From the NCBI GenBank assembly GCA_033442325.1, contig JAWQFM010000015.1, forward strand, positions 1-15,184: DNA of 15,184 bases, written 5' to 3'. The notes under the pieces were generated by a model. The model made no database searches and was not told the origin of the DNA. It was given only the letters and a program-made list of their open reading frames with translations. The position numbers and the translations under genes were made by a program. The first letter of the stretch is position 1, and each line of letters opens with the position of its first letter. The DNA comes from Salpingoeca rosetta. Its lineage: Eukaryota; Protista; Choanoflagellata. Of this stretch, positions 2,554 to 9,375 are shown piece by piece.

Positions 2554-2858
2554 AGTGCAAGCAAGCGAGTTTGGGCTGCCACATCTCCACCCAGTCGTGT
2601 CATCGACTGATTTCAGCTTTTCCCCGTCTTCTTCTGCACAAACACGCGCAACAGACGTTTGTCGTGGCTGGTTGCGCGCAATGCACACACACACACCACA
2701 CACACACACACACGCTGCATTCGCTGCGACGAAAGGAAAGGATGGATGGGAAGGTGCGTCGTGGTGGTTGGCGGTGGTGGTTTGGTCACACTCTCAGCCA
2801 CACCAACAACAGCAGCAGCAGCAGCAGGGAGCAGCAGGGGGATATTGATGATGATGAC

Positions 2859-2864
2859 AATGAC
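2859..2864 (+). repeat. Left target-site duplication AATGAC
   Basis: The identical hexamer lies at 8415-8420, directly outside the opposite TIR. Confidence 0.9.
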
Positions 2865-2880
2865 CTGGCCTCGGACATCC
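2865..2880 (+). repeat. Left terminal inverted repeat CTGGCCTCGGACATCC
   Basis: Exact reverse complement of 8399-8414 (GGATGTCCGAGGCCAG). Confidence 0.95.
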
Positions 2881-2885
2881 TCTGC

Positions 2886-2941
2886 GTCCGCTCTGTCCGC
2901 TCTGAGATCGTCCGCTCTGAGCTGTCCGCTCGAGCGGACAG
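2886..2941. repeat. Left subterminal GTCCGCTCTG repeats plus 20-bp palindrome (putative transposase-binding sites)
   Basis: GTCCGCTCTG at 2886, 2895 and 2910; perfect palindrome CTGTCCGCTCGAGCGGACAG at 2922-2941. Confidence 0.85.
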
Positions 2942-3018
2942 ATAATTGTAAACAGCGCACATAATTATCGTGGCTCGCAGATGATTATCAATGTACCGGC
3001 GACTTTTACTTACAACAC

Positions 3019-3185
3019 TTTGGCGCCATGCAACCAACACAACAGAAACCACACACACCACAACACACACGCACCACAACACAACACACACCTTCTCAGC
3101 GGCTTCTCAGCTTCTCTTTTTCTCGCGCGCGCGCCAAACACCCTCCCGCGCGCGCCAAACAACTTCTCGCGCGCGCCTCCATTGG
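3019..3185 (+). promoter_or_regulatory. Putative transposase promoter with E2F-like TTTGGCGC sites and reverse CCAAT
   Basis: TTTGGCGC at 3019-3026; GCGCCAAA at 3131-3138 and 3152-3159 within three CGCGCGCGCC repeats; ATTGG at 3181-3185; ATG at 3260. Confidence 0.4.
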
Positions 3186-3259
3186 GCTATCTCTCATCCC
3201 ATCGTCTACCAACAGTCTCAACACGCAGGCGTTCATTTTCACGACAGAAATAAGCAACG

Positions 3260-4177
3260 ATGTCGAAGCCAGTGTTTGTTGAGGAGCTGCATACGGATGT
3301 GGCTGATGTCGTCGCATTTCACCCAACGTTCGACGTGAGTGTGATGTCAGGTCACCTTGTCTTGGGTTTGTGGTTTGGCTCAGAGTTTCCGCTCAACCTC
3401 AACCACGCATTCGCATGCATGCGTACAGGTATTCACACAGCATCTGCAAGCTGCTGGCTATTCTTCAGCGGATTGCACGTTTACCTTTGGCGGCCGTGAA
3501 GTTACTCTCAAGGAGAATTCATGGCCCTTTTTTGTGCACCAATACCAAACAGACAGCAAGACAGCTTTGCACGTGTCTCGTGTCACTCGAGTGACTCGGC
3601 GCTTCGCGTCGTCCTCAGCCCAGCCACAAGGTGACCAAGCTGTAGACCCAGACGTGCCCCTCCCCAAGAAGGCAAAGAGACCAGGAGAAACGCACAAGGC
3701 TGTCACCCTTGCGCGCGCAGTGCTGCGATCCCGCGCCCACGGAGTGAAAATCATGGGCGGAGACTACGCGTACGAACTGTCCAAAGCACAGCTTACAATC
3801 GGCACACACGAGTGCGTGTTTGTACAACTTGTTGCTGATGCACTCTTTGAACACGATGCCATGCGAAGGACGTGGTCTTTAGTACGCGACAAGCTGGTGG
3901 TCATTCCAGTGATGCGCATACCAGAGTGGCAAACGCTGGTGGCAGCCAAGCACAAGTTGGGTTTGCCTTCGCTCTGTCTTGTTGCCGGTCATGCGCTTTC
4001 AGCCCGTGCGTTCTTGGCCCAGAAGCTGGGTGCACGAGGGGTTGTATTTTGTAATGAGCGACGCAAGCACCCACAATCTCTCCTCGCTGACGTGGCGGAG
4101 TCTCTCGCACATCGTGATCTTGACTCAGAATGCGATATCCCCGTTGCGGTCGCCATGGCAGATCTATCGGCACAGTT

Positions 4178-4222
<45 letters not shown>

Positions 4223-7200
4223 CTACACATGTGTGCGCGTGTGGGTTTGTGTGGGTGAATGTATTTTGTTTTAATAGCCTGTGGTATTGGTGCTCACAGG
4301 GAGCACCTGCAATTCCCTGGGCACGTACACTTACCACGGCTCACATAGGCTGCCTTGTGTGTTACCCTTGTGTACCTACCATGTGGCAGGTGGCACGACG
4401 GAGCATCACATATGGTGCAACACCTTGAGGTACTGGCTTGCGATGGGATGGCAACTCAACGCTCTCCGGACACACCTGTGGACACGCCTGCAGAGCCGTC
4501 ATCATCCAGCGTGACCACGTTGCATGTGACAGATCCGCATGAGCACGGTGCAACCCTGGACCCGGATGAACACACTGATTCAGGCCAGGCCCTACCTGTT
4601 CTTGCAAAACAACGTGCGGAACGGATTCAGAAGATTGGCGACCTTCAGGTATTTATTGAGATGATACTGCGGGTATTCGAGGAGTCTTGTTTGGTCTGTA
4701 TATTCGAACATAAGTCTCATACGTGGCGTGCTGTCCTTTCTTGCTCCCGCTGGTGTAGGCGTTGGGTTACCGGAAGCCGCGCTTTGTTGTCCGATTTGTG
4801 CATGGCAAGAATCGCACGATGATACACGTTCTGTGCCCTGCATGCCCCCCGGCGAAAAACGAAAAGCAGTTCAGCGACATGAAAAAGGCGCGAGATCATG
4901 CCAGCACTTGCACCAACAAGACAGCGAGATCCGGGCCAGGCACGTCCTTGCAAGACATTCGTGTCTCACTGGCACGTGTTAGAAAAGCACAAGATACGCC
5001 GAGCATTGACACTGCACAGTTGACCAAGTTCATCGATTGCGAACAATGGGCTGAAGCTGGACCACCAACAGCAGATGATATTGAGCAGTATGTTTTGAAA
5101 CATTCGTTGCATTGAAGGTTGTCCATCATATTCTGCTTGAGGTGTCTCTTACTTGATGTTGACCAATGCAACAGTTCGTACTGGCTAATAAACAGAGCAT
5201 GTTTGTGTCAATGAATTCAGGTCATATGGGGGCATGTGTAATGCGCTCGAATTGTCGCTAAGACTTGGCATCGTATCCCACAGTGCACCCCACATGGAAG
5301 CCCTTCGTCTCACAATCAACCAAGTGCTGGGGGAAACAACGACGGGCATCACCAGATATTCTCCACTGTTTCACATAGCCCTTGATATAGCGCTAACGTA
5401 TGGGTGTGGGGCATTAGATGACCTCGCTCGTGCTGACCTATTGCCGTGCAGCTCCCGCACGATGAGAAGGTACTTTCTTCCAGCCCAATGCACCAATGGA
5501 GTGAACAATTCACTGTTACTTAATTTTCTCCGAGTTTCAGCCGCAAGCGGAGCGGTATTCAACAGTCCACAATGCAAGGCCATTGCGTGTGCGATTGCTG
5601 TGGATGGGCTCAGCTTAAGCAAAGACATTTGCTATGATGAAGTGTCGGACATGTTTTATGGTCCGTTACCGCCTGTGTCGCCCGAGGAGATGCGACAAAA
5701 GTTGGGTAACGTTGCTGAACTTTGGGAATGGTTAGACTCTGTCGAATGGGCAGACAATGCACATTTGGCATGCTTGACAACAGTGGACGGTGCAGTGTCC
5801 TGCCCGATTGCAGTCAACTACACATCTCACCTTCGAGGGCCTCAACAGGTATTTAAACTTGGTGCGTGCTTGGTGACACAGTGTGATATGCCTGTTGCAT
5901 CTGCGTTGGTGAATCACGCTACACGTAACACCAGTGCAATTGCATGCATCGCAGGTAGAATTGCTCATGAGCGACACGCTGAAAGGCGTTTGCCAATGTC
6001 AGCGATGCTTAGAAAACGATGTTGCGTGCCATTACGAGGAGGGTCTGGAACAGCTAGCTCAGGATTCAGCTTGTATTGCTTGCAAAGAGGCGGGTGTGCA
6101 ATGTGTCCGCATTCAGGTCGTCGTCACAGTGATGGATTCAGAGTCGAGTCAGCTTACCTGGCAGCAGAGGTTGCCTAAAACTGCCATCTGTTCCATTCCA
6201 GACATTGCACACCTCGCGAAAGCCATGAGGAATTATATCATCAACCACTACATATGGCTGGAAGGCTATCTTATCAACACTCGCCAGCTCATTTGGTTAC
6301 ACACCAACGACCTCTGTACAATTAATCCAGTTTGCTGTATTCCCCGAGATCGCACCAGCCACACTCACCTTGAACAGCTGTTGATGGCAGATATTCCTGA
6401 CGCGGTTACAGCTCACCAGCTCTATCCGGACCCAATTGACTACAAGTCGTCCTCATCTGCCACCCGTTCCCCTTATTCCTTCATCACATCGACGTGCATC
6501 GGGATGAAATACGATCTTGTTGTCGACAATGAAGTAGCTTTCCTCGTGAAGCGCTCCGATCCTTCAGTTCGCACTGAAACATCAGCTCGTGGCGTAAAGA
6601 GCGCATGCTTACTCAGTGGCACATCAAATTGGCTGCTGTTGTGTTCCACGGGAATCCTCAAGATGTCACACACAGGAAAAATCACCACGTTGAAAGTCGA
6701 GAGCACCCTGTCCACGCTAGATCATATCCACTTCCATTCTGCAAGCGAAGGGTTGGCGGTGTCAGGCAAGGCGGTTGGACGCTGTGTTATTGAAGGAGAT
6801 ACCATCCGTGTTACGGATGTTGAGCTCTTCTCAATCACGATTCGAGAAGCTGTCAGGTGTGGAGACATGATTTACTTAGCGACAGACAATGGATTGATGA
6901 AGTGTCAGGACGAGCAGCAGAGCACACCATTTATGGAAAAAGTGTGGCATCTGTCAGTCTCTGGAGATTCGGTTGTGTTTTCTTGTGCGTCAGGAATCTT
7001 CTCCTGTGTCAACGAAACAGTGACACCAGTGCTACAACGCACACTCAACTACCCTGCACCCATATCAGTGCTACGGCATACGGTGCTACTGGGTGAAAGA
7101 AACAAGGTCACAATTGTGTCCAGCACAGTACCGTTGAAACGCTACTTGAGGAAAGTACGCAATCTATACACTGCCGGGGGTTTACTTGATCGCCAGAGAA

Positions 7201-8252
7201 AGAAGGACTGCACGCTGCAGGAAGCAATAGCACACGTCCGTGATGTGCATGAATACACGGTTGACCAATACGAGCAGCAACTACAAATTACCGCAGGCAC
7301 TTCAAGCCCGGAGTCACTGCAAGGGCCAGGTGGTCTGTTTGCACGAACTCTCGTTGCCCGCCAAGAACTGTTGCTTGAAGGACTGACACGACTGAACAAA
7401 ACTCTCTCTGGAATGCTGGTGTATAGTCGAGCAATTCAAGAAGACGTCGTGGAGAGTGCCTTTGCGCAGATTCTGAAGCACACATCCGCTGCGCTCACCC
7501 AAAGAGAATTCGGTTACAAGTTCCCAAAAGTGGGACAACTGATGTTACTACGCATACAGCAGGGGCGCAAACGTCTGTTTACATTCAACCATCAGCAACG
7601 AATGTATGCAGGAGTGCAGCTTGGTACACAAACTGGTGTGCCAATCGATGCGACCTTAGAGACACCCATTAAACCGGCACTCCCAGACAGAACAGCGTCA
7701 AAGGAGCTCTATGCACGGGTCAGAGAAGTCATTGGCGACAAAACAGTTGTGTCGCGGATCCGAGGACTCAAGAAGCAGCGACCTGGCACAAAACCAGCCC
7801 TGAGGTACCTTCTCCACAGGAATGCTCTTACAAGCAACCTTGATGGTGTTGCCCTCAGCGTGATGAACGATATCGTTTTTTGTGCTCATTCATTCATGGC
7901 TATTCGTGGCCCCAATCACAAAGTATGGTTTGCACAGTTGACAGTCAATGTGTCACAACACCAACTGGATCGAGGAGCTGACCTTGCTCTGACTTGGCTT
8001 GAATGCGAGAATGACAAGTGGGTGTTTGGCAACCCGGATCTAATCTCAACAAAGTCTTTGATTTGTGACGTTTCGGAGCATATCACTCAAGACCCCTTGC
8101 ATGTGAGCGTGCAAGCGATCGCTGAAGCCAAGCAAAGCATGGCAAGCCTCATTCCACCAAGACAGAACTCAAGTGGAATTTCAGAGCGCGTCTACAGGAC
8201 TACAAAGGACGACAGACGACGACGACAAGGACAACGACAGCACCCTAGTTAA
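3260..8252 (+). CDS. P-element/THAP9-like DDE transposase, multi-domain, about 1,446 aa; exons 3260-3334, 3429-4180, 4390-4648, 4759-5087, 5221-5848, 5955-8252
   Basis: Five GT-AG introns with matching phases (0,2,0,2,0) join the ORF-track pieces into one 4,341-nt open frame. Motifs in P-transposase order: LPCSSRTMRRY; CAIAVDGLSLSKDICYD (D at 5603; cf. CVLAFDEMKVAAAFEYD); VVVTVMDSE (D at 6135; cf. VVAIVSD); PDIAHLAKAMRNY (DxxH at 6201-6212; cf. SDTPHLIKLVRNH); SRAIQEDVVESAFAQI (E at 7452; cf. SRLSQDIVEHFF). Intron 4181-4389 is the least certain junction. Confidence 0.85.
4181..4220. repeat. (GT)20 microsatellite at the 5' end of transposase intron 2
   Basis: The GT run starts exactly at the predicted phase-2 donor. 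Confidence 0.9.
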
Positions 8253-8342
8253 CACTTCAACGACCACTGTTCCTGAAGTTCCCTGTTCCTTTACCCCTTG
8301 TTCCTCATTCTGAAGGCAAAATGCATGATTTTCGCATTTCCG

Positions 8343-8384
8343 TGTCCGCTGTCCGCTCTGTGAATCTGTCCGCTGCAGCGGACA
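8343..8384. repeat. Right subterminal GTCCGCT repeats plus 18-bp palindrome
   Basis: GTCCGCT at 8344 and 8351; perfect palindrome TGTCCGCTGCAGCGGACA at 8367-8384. Confidence 0.85.
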
Positions 8385-8398
8385 AAATGCAATAGAGC

Positions 8399-8414
8399 GG
8401 ATGTCCGAGGCCAG
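8399..8414 (-). repeat. Right terminal inverted repeat
   Basis: GGATGTCCGAGGCCAG is the reverse complement of the left TIR. Confidence 0.95.
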
Positions 8415-8420
8415 AATGAC
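8415..8420 (+). repeat. Right target-site duplication AATGAC
   Basis: Identical to 2859-2864. Confidence 0.9.
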
Positions 8421-9375
8421 ACAAGCAATCCATCAATCAAGCAATCAAGCAGACGAGCAAGCACACAAGCAAGAAGCAAGCAAGCCAAACAAAGGGACAA
8501 GTATTCATTCACTCCGCTTGGACGAGCGACACGTCCACCACGTGGTGCGTGCGTGTGTGTTGTACTCACTGCTCTGCCCTCCTTTACACTGTTCCTCCCT
8601 GCCTCGCAGTCCACTCTCCCTTTCTACCCTTTGCACACCCTTTGCTTGACCTGCTCTCTGCACACCCTCTCTTCTCCACCCCCCCGCCCCTTCACTCACA
8701 CGTCTCAAGTCACATGTCTCTCATCTCACCCTTTGCTTTTGGCTGCAACGCTGCGCGTCTTCATCTCCACCACCACCACCTGTTTGGCAGGCTGACGATG
8801 AGGATGATGATGGTGGCTTGAACGACAGTACCGTGTCCTTGAGCGCGTGCCATCACCGTGTGCCACGACAACAAGAGGCACTTCCTTCTCTCTCGCTCTG
8901 TCTCGGTATGTGTGTGGCTGATGGCGTGGGGGGGGGTGTTGCCTGGGATTTCCATTCCACTGCACTGTACCTCAGTGCGCTGCGTGCCGCGACATGCACA
9001 CCACAGTTTGCACTCCTCCTCCCCCACTTATCCCCTCGGCATGTCCTTGTCCTTGTCAACCACCTCCCCTCGTCCATCACACCCCACCCCCCCCCACACC
9101 CCACACATACTCTCTCTCCTTTACCCCTGTCACGATGTGTGCTTGCTTCAAAGCAGGCCGCTGACATTGTCATCACCGCTGTCAGACGGTGGTCGGTGCC
9201 ATGCACGAGCATGGAGACAGTGAGCCAGCTCGTGGTCTCCAGCGTGGTGGCTGGAATGTGCACTGAGGTGAAGGATCCCACCACCACACTTCCGCTTCCA
9301 TGCCGCCATGGCTGACACCACTGGCACTGCTGGTTAACACGCACCAGCAGGCATCGCTCCCAGCGCCACACATGT

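What the first reader, a model, noticed from the sequence alone, without database searches (positions are those of the whole stretch)
6400..7140. Probable beta-propeller inserted in the transposase insertion domain, where P transposase binds GTP
The second D (6135) and catalytic E (7452) are 439 aa apart, versus about 230 in Drosophila P transposase. The extra ~240 aa consist of short hydrophobic strands in blade-like units (YDLVVDNEVAFLV; WLLLCSTGILKM; GLAVSGKAVGRC; DMIYLATDNGLMKC; VWHLSVSGDSVVFSCASGIFSC; VLLGERNKVTIV). Helical sequence resumes afterwards (LKRYLRKVRNLY). In P/THAP9 this region is the all-helical GTP-binding domain. A propeller here could be a protein/ligand-binding module for targeting or regulation and could be linked to the altered TSD length (inference).
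Basis: partly seen in the sequence, partly recalled or inferred. Interest (0 to 1): 0.8.

Follow-up and report, generated by a model that had tools for sequence, protein, structure and literature searches.

The report
Six-bladed propeller nested inside a transposase
A mobile DNA element in the choanoflagellate Salpingoeca rosetta encodes a cut-and-paste enzyme with a complete six-bladed propeller domain built into the middle of its catalytic region, an arrangement I found described in no paper or domain library, and relatives in sea anemones share it.

Summary
The window is Salpingoeca rosetta DNA. Positions 2865-8414 are a DNA transposon with perfect 16-bp inverted ends and a 6-bp target duplication (AATGAC). 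RNA reads show a precise empty site at this locus.

Its transposase has D1 at 5603, D2 at 6135 and E at 7452. D2 and E are 439 aa apart, against 228 aa in Drosophila P transposase.

Relatives from other eukaryotes keep a large insert at the same position. In the cnidarian branch (Exaiptasia; the Nematostella protein shares the layout but gave no NHL hit) it scores as Pfam NHL above threshold.

The link to P transposase is weak but consistent. No GTP-binding domain, THAP domain or 8-bp duplication was found. What the propeller does is inferred, not shown.

The parts
2865..8414 (+). The whole DNA transposon (5550 bp) that carries the transposase gene.
   Evidence: It is bounded by perfect 16-bp inverted ends and a 6-bp direct duplication. 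RNA reads join 2858/2864 to 8415/8421, a precise empty site.
2859..2864 (.). Left copy of the target-site duplication, AATGAC.
   Evidence: Only one copy is present in the empty-site reads.
8415..8420 (.). Right copy of the target-site duplication, AATGAC.
2865..2880 (+). Left terminal inverted repeat, CTGGCCTCGGACATCC.
   Evidence: It is the reverse complement of 8399-8414.
8399..8414 (-). Right terminal inverted repeat.
5234..5848 (+). Exon encoding the N-terminal half of the RNase H-like fold. Catalytic D1 (AVDGLSL) is at 5603-5605.
   Evidence: The D is invariant in the 20-row family alignment A5. Its only Pfam hit is TNP-like_RNaseH_N, E 0.053.
5849..5954 (+). Phase-0 GT..AG intron (106 nt) joining the two catalytic exons.
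   Evidence: The junction lies at the same place in the homologous locus L001, and the relative P0039 reads through it without an intron.
5997..6104 (+). Cysteine cluster C-x2-C-x6-C-x14-C-x2-C-x6-C (Zn2Cys6-like), between D1 and D2.
   Evidence: The same spacing recurs in P0003, P0006, P0012, P0016 and P0019. Weak profile hits to PPR1, PUT3, Pho7 and LEU3.
6135..6137 (+). Catalytic D2.
   Evidence: Invariant in alignment A4. It aligns with D303 of P transposase 6p5a.
6201..6233 (+). DxxH-x2-K-x2-RN motif (DIAHLAKAMRN), the start of the insertion region.
   Evidence: H is invariant and K nearly so. It aligns with SDTPHLIKLVRN of 6p5a.
6396..7145 (+). Six-bladed NHL-like beta-propeller (model residues 148-397): 24 strands. 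I assign the first strand (6405-6425) to the last blade, which would close the ring; this comes from strand order, not from coordinates.
7128..7451 (+). Helical second half of the insertion region, with the conserved QGPGG motif at 7320-7334.
   Evidence: DSSP helices 392-407, 421-445 and 464-483. QGPxG is conserved across branches.
7452..7454 (+). Catalytic E, in the motif VVExxFS.
   Evidence: E is nearly invariant and the following F invariant in alignment A6.
5955..8252 (+). Last exon: Zn cluster, D2, insertion region with propeller, E and a C-terminal beta-rich domain.
   Evidence: Uninterrupted ORF, 26-38% identical over its whole length to P0002, P0003, P0004 and P0006.

Best explanation
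Shown: window 6396-7145 encodes a compact, closed six-bladed beta-propeller of the NHL type. It is an integral, translated part of the DDE transposase of a 5.55-kb cut-and-paste transposon of Salpingoeca rosetta.

The propeller is nested as a loop insertion inside the mostly helical insertion region of the RNase H-like catalytic domain. It follows beta5 and the DxxH motif and precedes the helix that carries the catalytic E. Relatives in other eukaryotes, including a cnidarian branch, all carry a large insert at this position, and in the cnidarian branch it scores as Pfam NHL. It therefore looks like a standing feature of the lineage rather than an accident of this copy.

Inferred: the chain enters and leaves the propeller through neighbouring strands of the last blade. 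The conserved residues cluster at that entry/exit side (P148, Q155, P158, P160, R200, P393, L394, Y397). The propeller is therefore probably docked rigidly on the insertion region next to the active site, with its other face free.

Its most likely role is as a platform in the transposition complex. It would hold flanking or target DNA, or the partner subunit, in place for cleavage and joining. That is the job done by the helical insertion domains of P, Hermes and RAG1, and in trans by the RAG2 propeller.

No GTP-binding module was detected, so GTP dependence is not expected.
For: Fold:
- AlphaFold2 model m585c6b76d328: mean pLDDT 78.2, pTM 0.68, with 24 strands between residues 151 and 390.
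- Foldseek: at least 500 hits with E <= 0.001, and the listed ones are propellers.

Independent sequence evidence:
- The family profile A2 hits NHLRC2 6g7w at E 0.0012 and the designed NHL propeller Pizza6 at E 0.0035.
- Pfam NHL scores above its cut-off of 20 bits in P0036 (38.5), P0054 from Exaiptasia (29.3), P0050, P0052 and P0056. In each case the hit lies between that protein's D2 module and its E module.

Position:
- Order of elements along the model: D2 at residue 61, beta5 at 79-82, DxxH at 83-86, helices to 143, propeller at 148-397, helices at 392-494, E at 500.

Conservation:
- P0002, P0003, P0004, P0006 and P0007 keep the domain in continuous ORFs at 21-27% identity.
- Every family member in which both flanking modules were detected has roughly 270-480 aa between them.

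The element is a real, recently mobile transposon:
- Inverted ends, target duplication and empty-site reads.

Catalytic residues:
- D1, D2, H of DxxH and E are invariant or nearly so.
Against: - The window's own propeller has no Pfam NHL hit.
- hhalign could not align it to the cnidarian-branch insert (probability below 1%). Against another distant group only the last blade aligned (83%). A single origin of the insert across the family is therefore not proven.
- The propeller is the least conserved part of the protein and is electrically neutral (24 K+R against 24 D+E). That does not point to nucleic-acid binding.
- No RNA reads cover the gene in three RNA-seq runs, so translation of this copy is unconfirmed.
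- The catalytic exon with D1 was not in the model, and the non-propeller parts were never tested structurally (note).
- The functional role is pure inference.
Confidence: 0.8

Rival explanations
1. The propeller is a targeting or regulatory module rather than part of the catalytic machinery. It would bind a host protein, chromatin mark or small ligand that decides where or when the element moves.
For: The propeller evolves faster than the catalytic modules (21-27% identity against 33-55%), as expected of a specificity surface. NHL and related propellers are common protein- and ligand-binding platforms (hits: teneurins, PknD sensor, lactonases). Its net charge is neutral.
Against: It lies in the insertion region, which in solved transposases packs against the active site and DNA (PMC7776569). 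No ligand-binding or enzymatic residues of the lactonase-type propellers were examined, and no partner is known.
Confidence: 0.3
2. The propeller functionally replaces the GTP cofactor of P transposase. A protein element, rather than a bound nucleotide, would position the transposon end for catalysis.
For: The propeller begins about 62 residues after the H of DxxH. In P transposase the GTP-contacting residues K385-N447 lie 42-104 residues after the equivalent H343. No GTP-binding domain signal was found. The aspartate three residues before E (equivalent to P's D528) is kept in the window's own branch.
Against: The correspondence rests on linear distance only. The helical parts do not align to P by sequence, and the D at E-3 is lost in distant branches. 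No structure superposition on 6p5a could be made.
Confidence: 0.15
3. The segment is a captured host gene fragment or passenger that is tolerated but dispensable, or is not translated at all. The annotated gene model PTSG_05793 removes part of it.
For: PTSG_05793 (P0001) splices out the residues VWHLS...LLDRQ. No RNA reads are available to settle the splicing.
Against: The same annotated model uses wrong reading frames that destroy D2 and the DxxH motif, so it is not credible. The segment is in frame with both catalytic halves and is conserved as a foldable domain in at least six independent homologues from other samples, in continuous ORFs. An unselected intron or passenger would not keep an ORF and a fold at 21-27% identity.
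Confidence: 0.04

Closest known systems
Drosophila P element transposase / THAP9 (PDB 6p5a; Pfam TNP-like domains)
   Same: Both are DDE RNase H-like enzymes with a DxxH-x2-K-x2-RN motif after D2. In a D2-module profile search of all PDB sequences, P transposase is the only hit, and it aligns D2 to D303 and the motif to SDTPHLIKLVRN. The only Pfam family hit by the D1 module is TNP-like_RNaseH_N. Both have a large insertion between beta5 and the E helix, and both genes contain introns.
   Different: All similarity scores fall below the curated or significant thresholds (E 0.0035-0.7). There is no THAP domain and no detectable GTP-binding insertion domain. The target duplication is 6 bp rather than 8, and the ends are 16 bp rather than 31. 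D2 and E are 439 aa apart rather than 228 because of the propeller. A Zn2Cys6-like cluster sits between D1 and D2.
RAG1-RAG2 recombinase and the ProtoRAG/Transib transposases
   Same: A DDE enzyme with a helical insertion region works together with a six-bladed beta-propeller (own knowledge; RAG2 is a Kelch-type propeller).
   Different: In RAG the propeller is a separate protein of the Kelch type. Here it is an NHL-like domain within the same chain, inside the insertion region. No sequence relation to RAG1, RAG2 or Transib was found, and the duplication is 6 bp rather than 5.
NHL-repeat propellers (PknD sensor domain 1rwi, Brat 1q7f, TRIM71 9jur, Lin41 6fpt, NHLRC2 6g7w)
   Different: The window's domain is more compact, about 250 aa including a disordered loop, and does not itself match Pfam NHL. 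Sequence identity to the structural matches is 6-14%. It is nested in an enzyme rather than terminal or free-standing.
Dada transposases with a DEDDy exonuclease inserted after D2 (PMC3706591)
   Same: This is a precedent for a whole foreign domain inserted into the catalytic core of a eukaryotic DDE transposase with a DxxH motif. Dada also has a 6-7 bp target duplication.
   Different: The Dada insert is an exonuclease located between D2 and DxxH. Dada has no terminal inverted repeats and targets small-RNA genes, and its D2 and E are 176 aa apart. No direct sequence comparison with Dada could be made here.

Membership tests
P element / THAP9 superfamily | Catalytic domain matches the Pfam TNP-like RNase H models (PF21787 N-terminal, PF21789 C-terminal) above the gathering score. 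| tested here: not met
   PF21787 is the only family hit by the D1 exon, but at E 0.053 and 14.3 bits against a cut-off of 24.6. The best score in relatives is 18.1 bits, E 0.0035, in Nematostella P0057. No hit to the C-terminal model.
P element / THAP9 superfamily | DDE triad with a DxxH motif after the second D. | tested here: met
   D1, D2, H and E are invariant or nearly so in alignments A4-A6. D2 and the motif align to D303 and DTPHLIKLVRN of 6p5a (E 0.71). The motif is also shared with hAT, Kolobok, MuDR and Dada (PMC3706591), so it is not exclusive to P.
P element / THAP9 superfamily | Helical GTP-binding insertion domain (PF21788) with GTP-contact residues K385, K400, V401, S409, F443, D444, N447 and D528. 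| tested here: not met
   No Pfam hit at E <= 5 in any of 24 members. A profile of the helical+E region finds only designed helical bundles in the PDB. Only a D at E-3 (the D528 position) is present, and only in the near branch. Structural superposition was not possible.
P element / THAP9 superfamily | N-terminal THAP zinc-finger DNA-binding domain. | tested here: not met
   No THAP hit in any upstream ORF at E <= 1. The upstream exon has a C-x2-C...H-x4-C finger instead.
P element / THAP9 superfamily | 8-bp target-site duplication. | tested here: not met
   The duplication is 6 bp (AATGAC), fixed by the empty-site reads. This is a single insertion only.
NHL-repeat six-bladed beta-propeller | Closed six-bladed propeller superposable on solved NHL domains. 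| tested here: met
NHL-repeat six-bladed beta-propeller | Sequence match to the Pfam NHL repeat (PF01436) above 20 bits. | tested here: not met
   No hit for the window's protein. The criterion is met in distant family members at the same position: P0036 38.5 bits, P0056 34.3, P0054 29.3.
Zn2Cys6 binuclear cluster (for the Cys cluster upstream of D2) | C-x2-C-x6-C-x5-12-C-x2-C-x6-8-C spacing, and a Pfam Zn_clus match. | tested here: inconclusive
   The spacing is exact in relatives (middle loop 6-9 residues) and slightly long in the window (14 residues). Pfam Zn_clus gives E 0.37 at best, and the PDB hits PPR1, PUT3, Pho7 and LEU3 give E 0.19-0.8.

The most novel reading that the evidence does not exclude
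This is an undescribed lineage, possibly a superfamily, of eukaryotic DDE transposons found in choanoflagellates, cnidarians and uncultured eukaryotes. Its catalytic core has built in a six-bladed propeller that is required for DNA cleavage or joining. It would act as a within-chain counterpart of RAG2, clamping flanking or target DNA next to the active site. A Zn2Cys6-like cluster inside the RNase H fold would read CCG-N6-CGG palindromes at the element's ends.
Probability: 0.2. Interest if true: 0.85.

Novelty: new variant of a known kind. Interest (0 to 1): 0.66.

Why it matters
In P, Hermes and RAG1 the insertion domain is helical and shapes the active site. P transposase is noted as unique for binding GTP there (PMC7776569). 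A lineage that places a whole propeller at this position shows that the site tolerates, and perhaps exploits, a completely different kind of module.

It also offers a natural single-chain parallel to the RAG1-RAG2 pairing of a DDE enzyme with a six-bladed propeller. That parallel bears on how such partnerships arise.

The element looks intact and recently mobile in a genetically tractable relative of animals, so the idea can be tested directly.

The family is invisible to Pfam. It is also absent from the published S. rosetta transposon survey (PMC6875170), and its copy here is mis-annotated as a host gene (PTSG_05793).

Tried and rejected
- **First AlphaFold2 run.** With a 3-row alignment the mean pLDDT was 36, too low to use. 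I replaced it with a 45-row alignment.
- **Word-index search with the 24-row alignment.** It returned only the window's own gene model, so that search was wasted.
- **ESM Atlas.** Feature searches with the ORF, with P0003 and with the propeller alone gave no usable hit. The Atlas structure search returned only bacterial propeller proteins.
- **PDB profile searches of the other modules.** The D1 module and the helical+E module gave only noise. The relation to P therefore rests on the D2 module and on sub-threshold Pfam hits.
- **hhalign between propellers.** The window-clade propeller did not align to the inserts of distant branches. Only the last blade aligned with one group (83%), and nothing aligned with the cnidarian branch.
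- **RNA reads.** They gave no coverage of the gene, so splicing could not be tested directly.
- **Dada.** I considered it because of the 6-7 bp duplication and rejected it. Dada has no inverted ends, targets small-RNA genes and has D2 and E 176 aa apart.
- **KDZ/Zisupton, hAT and Kolobok.** No Pfam hits. No reference sequences were available for a direct comparison.
- **Boundaries in relatives.** The ends of the related element in L002-L005 could not be fixed, because the contigs break in a CT microsatellite. The inverted repeats around the L007 copy were not resolved.

Full report
**What the window is.**
The 772-aa ORF at 5934-8252 is 99% identical, over the parts it shares, to Salpingoeca rosetta PTSG_05793, an annotated 'hypothetical protein'. 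That gene model threads through the region in several frames. It removes the catalytic motifs, so it is an annotation artefact and not evidence of splicing.

**The element around the finding.**
- At 2865-2880 and 8399-8414 there are perfect 16-bp inverted ends (CTGGCCTCGGACATCC), flanked by a direct AATGAC on each side.
- I laid three 2026 RNA-seq runs of the same species on 2900-8500. About a quarter of each run was read.
- Depth was essentially zero over 3274-8322 and 12-39x from 8415 onward.
- The unmatched left parts of those reads spell the sequence that ends at 2858 in the window.
- The reads therefore carry the site without the element and with a single AATGAC. None of the seven equivalent cut positions gives GT..AG, so this is an empty site and not an intron.
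- This fixes the boundaries and the 6-bp duplication. It also shows the insertion is absent from the DNA behind those transcripts: either a polymorphism or a paralogous empty locus. Mixed-frequency differences at 8424-8465 leave the second possibility open.
- The published S. rosetta transposon survey lists Helitron, Harbinger, MULE, Sola1, two Tigger and one Tc1/mariner family. None of them has 16-bp ends and a 6-bp duplication (PMC6875170).

**The transposase.**
- The catalytic domain is split by a phase-0 GT..AG intron at 5849-5954. The junction lies at the same place in a 38%-identical homologous locus, L001, and the relative P0039 reads through it without an intron.
- D1 is at 5603 (AVDGLSL), D2 at 6135 (VMDSES), and the motif DIAHLAKAMRN at 6201-6233. 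The catalytic E is at 7452 in VVESAF.
- All of these are invariant or nearly so in family alignments.
- D2 and E are 439 aa apart, against 228 in P transposase (D303, E531; PMC7776569).

**The fold of the insert.**
- An exhaustive profile search of 1.84 billion representatives found 38 relatives.
- With a 45-row alignment, AlphaFold2 gave a model of window:5955-8249 with mean pLDDT 78.2 and pTM 0.68.
- Residues 151-390 form 24 strands. Block pLDDT is 79-97 over residues 171-400, with one disordered loop at 163-170. Helices flank the strands on both sides.
- VIA-align against 48,161 PDB representatives put six-bladed NHL or SMP-30-type propellers at the top:

|---|---|---|---|
| PknD sensor domain | 21.4 | 2.9 | 224 of 254 |
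| Teneurin-like NHL | 21.2 | 2.9 | 232 |
| Brat NHL | 21.0 | 3.6 | 238 |
| TRIM71 | 20.8 | 2.7 | 220 |
| Lin41 | 20.8 | 2.9 | 223 |
| Mei-P26 | 20.3 | 3.7 | 233 |

- These matches all cover model residues 148-399. Foldseek agreed (best E 5e-10, at least 500 matches at E <= 0.001, the listed ones propellers).
- Twenty-four strands at four per blade give six blades.
- By strand order, the first strand (151-157) would complete the last blade. The chain would then enter and leave side by side, the usual way a propeller sits in a loop of another domain. I inferred this from strand order and did not inspect coordinates.

**Independent sequence support.**
- A profile of 24 family members hits NHLRC2 (E 0.0012) and the designed NHL propeller Pizza6 (E 0.0035) in the PDB.
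- Distant full-length members pass the Pfam NHL cut-off of 20 bits: P0036 38.5, P0056 34.3, P0054 29.3, P0050 28.5, P0052 25.6. In each, the repeats lie between that protein's D2 module and its E module.
- P0054 is Exaiptasia diaphana LOC114574924. P0057, which shares the module order but gave no NHL hit, is a Nematostella vectensis predicted protein.
- Clusters in that branch hold up to 247 near-identical sequences, as expected of a multi-copy element.
- In every family member where both flanking modules could be located, roughly 270-480 aa separate them. No propeller-less member was seen.

**Limits on the homology claim.**
- The window's own propeller does not match Pfam NHL.
- hhalign aligned only its last blade to one distant group (83%) and nothing to the cnidarian branch.
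- A single origin of the insert is therefore likely from its constant position, but not proven.
- Within the near clade the propeller is the least conserved part (21-27% identity against 33-55% for the catalytic modules).
- The conserved residues are mostly glycines, prolines and hydrophobics. An invariant arginine and a conserved PDP/PL-x2-Y frame sit at the entry and exit.
- Its net charge is zero.

**Where it sits relative to P.**
- The order along the chain is D2, helix, beta5, DxxH helix, a hairpin and three short helices, the propeller, about 100 helical residues with a conserved QGPxG, and then the E helix.
- That is the insertion-domain position, between beta5 and alpha4, described for P, Hermes and RAG1 (PMC7776569).
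- The relation to P itself is thin but consistent. P transposase is the only PDB sequence hit by the D2-module profile, with D2 on D303 and the motif on SDTPHLIKLVRN (E 0.71).
- TNP-like_RNaseH_N is the only Pfam family hit by the D1 module, in the window (E 0.053), in P0012 (0.09) and in Nematostella P0057 (0.0035). All are below its cut-off.
- No GTP-binding insertion domain, C-terminal TNP-like domain or THAP domain was detected, and the duplication is 6 bp.
- By linear distance the propeller starts about 62 residues after the DxxH histidine. That falls within the 42-104-residue stretch where P's GTP contacts lie. This is arithmetic, not a superposition.

**Mechanism.**
Shown: a conserved, closed six-bladed propeller nested in the insertion region of an intact, recently mobile DDE transposase.

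Inferred: it is docked through its entry/exit side and presents its free face to DNA or to the partner subunit in the transposition complex. That role is analogous to the helical insertion domains of related enzymes and to RAG2 acting on RAG1.

The main alternative is a targeting or regulatory surface, which its faster evolution favours. A link to the 6-bp duplication is untested.

**Verdict.**
P-superfamily membership, the GTP-site equivalence and the function remain open. I found no description of a propeller inside a transposase insertion domain in the searched literature.

The scan's own note s1-438641 had already flagged the element and its 6-bp duplication on this same window. I confirmed those features here.

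Noticed in passing
window 2858-2865 and 8414-8421: RNA-seq reads from three 2026 runs of the same species read straight from ...GATGATGAC into AATGACACAAGC. This is a precise empty site with one copy of the 6-bp duplication, and the element itself has essentially no RNA coverage. The insertion is therefore polymorphic between cultures, or a paralogous empty locus exists.
   Followed up: partly
window 5997-6104: A cysteine cluster with Zn2Cys6 binuclear-cluster spacing sits inside the RNase H-like fold between D1 and D2. It is conserved across the family, including the cnidarian branch (which has a longer middle loop). Profile hits to PPR1, PUT3, Pho7 and LEU3 are weak.
   Followed up: partly
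window 2886-2945 and 8344-8384: All nine copies of GTCCGCTS in the window lie within 80 bp of the element's ends (1.0 expected by chance). They include perfect palindromes, CTGTCCGCTCGAGCGGACAG and TGTCCGCTGCAGCGGACA, which are CCG-N6-CGG sites of the kind Zn2Cys6 dimers bind (own knowledge). A relative only 33% identical in protein (L002) carries GTCCGCTCTG repeats and a similar palindrome. These are candidate transposase binding sites, at unequal distances from the two ends (about 70 and 38 bp).
   Followed up: partly
window 7320-7334: A QGPxG motif about 40 residues before the catalytic E is conserved in both near and distant branches of the family. Its role is unknown.
   Followed up: no
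window 7872-8150: A C-terminal beta-rich domain (model residues 640-732, pLDDT 84-90) was confidently predicted but not identified. It was never searched on its own.
   Followed up: no
window 3300-8300 (PTSG_05793): The public gene model for this locus splices through the transposon in several wrong frames and runs on into flanking sequence. It is a mis-annotated transposase, not a host gene.
   Followed up: yes
window 3655, 4475, 7983: Contigs of another run of the same organism (X1, library type not recorded) carry the element with three fixed single-base differences from the window. This is either another copy or strain variation.
   Followed up: no
P0050-P0057 (relatives); L007:10001-13480: The NHL-bearing branch of the family occurs in Exaiptasia diaphana and Nematostella vectensis, and on a 917-kb eukaryotic metagenome contig as single intronless ORFs. 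Clusters hold up to 247 near-identical sequences, which suggests active multi-copy elements in cnidarians.
   Followed up: partly
window 4762-5115: An upstream exon encodes a C-x2-C...H-x4-C zinc finger, conserved in L001. It is not a THAP domain and is probably the N-terminal DNA-binding module.
   Followed up: no
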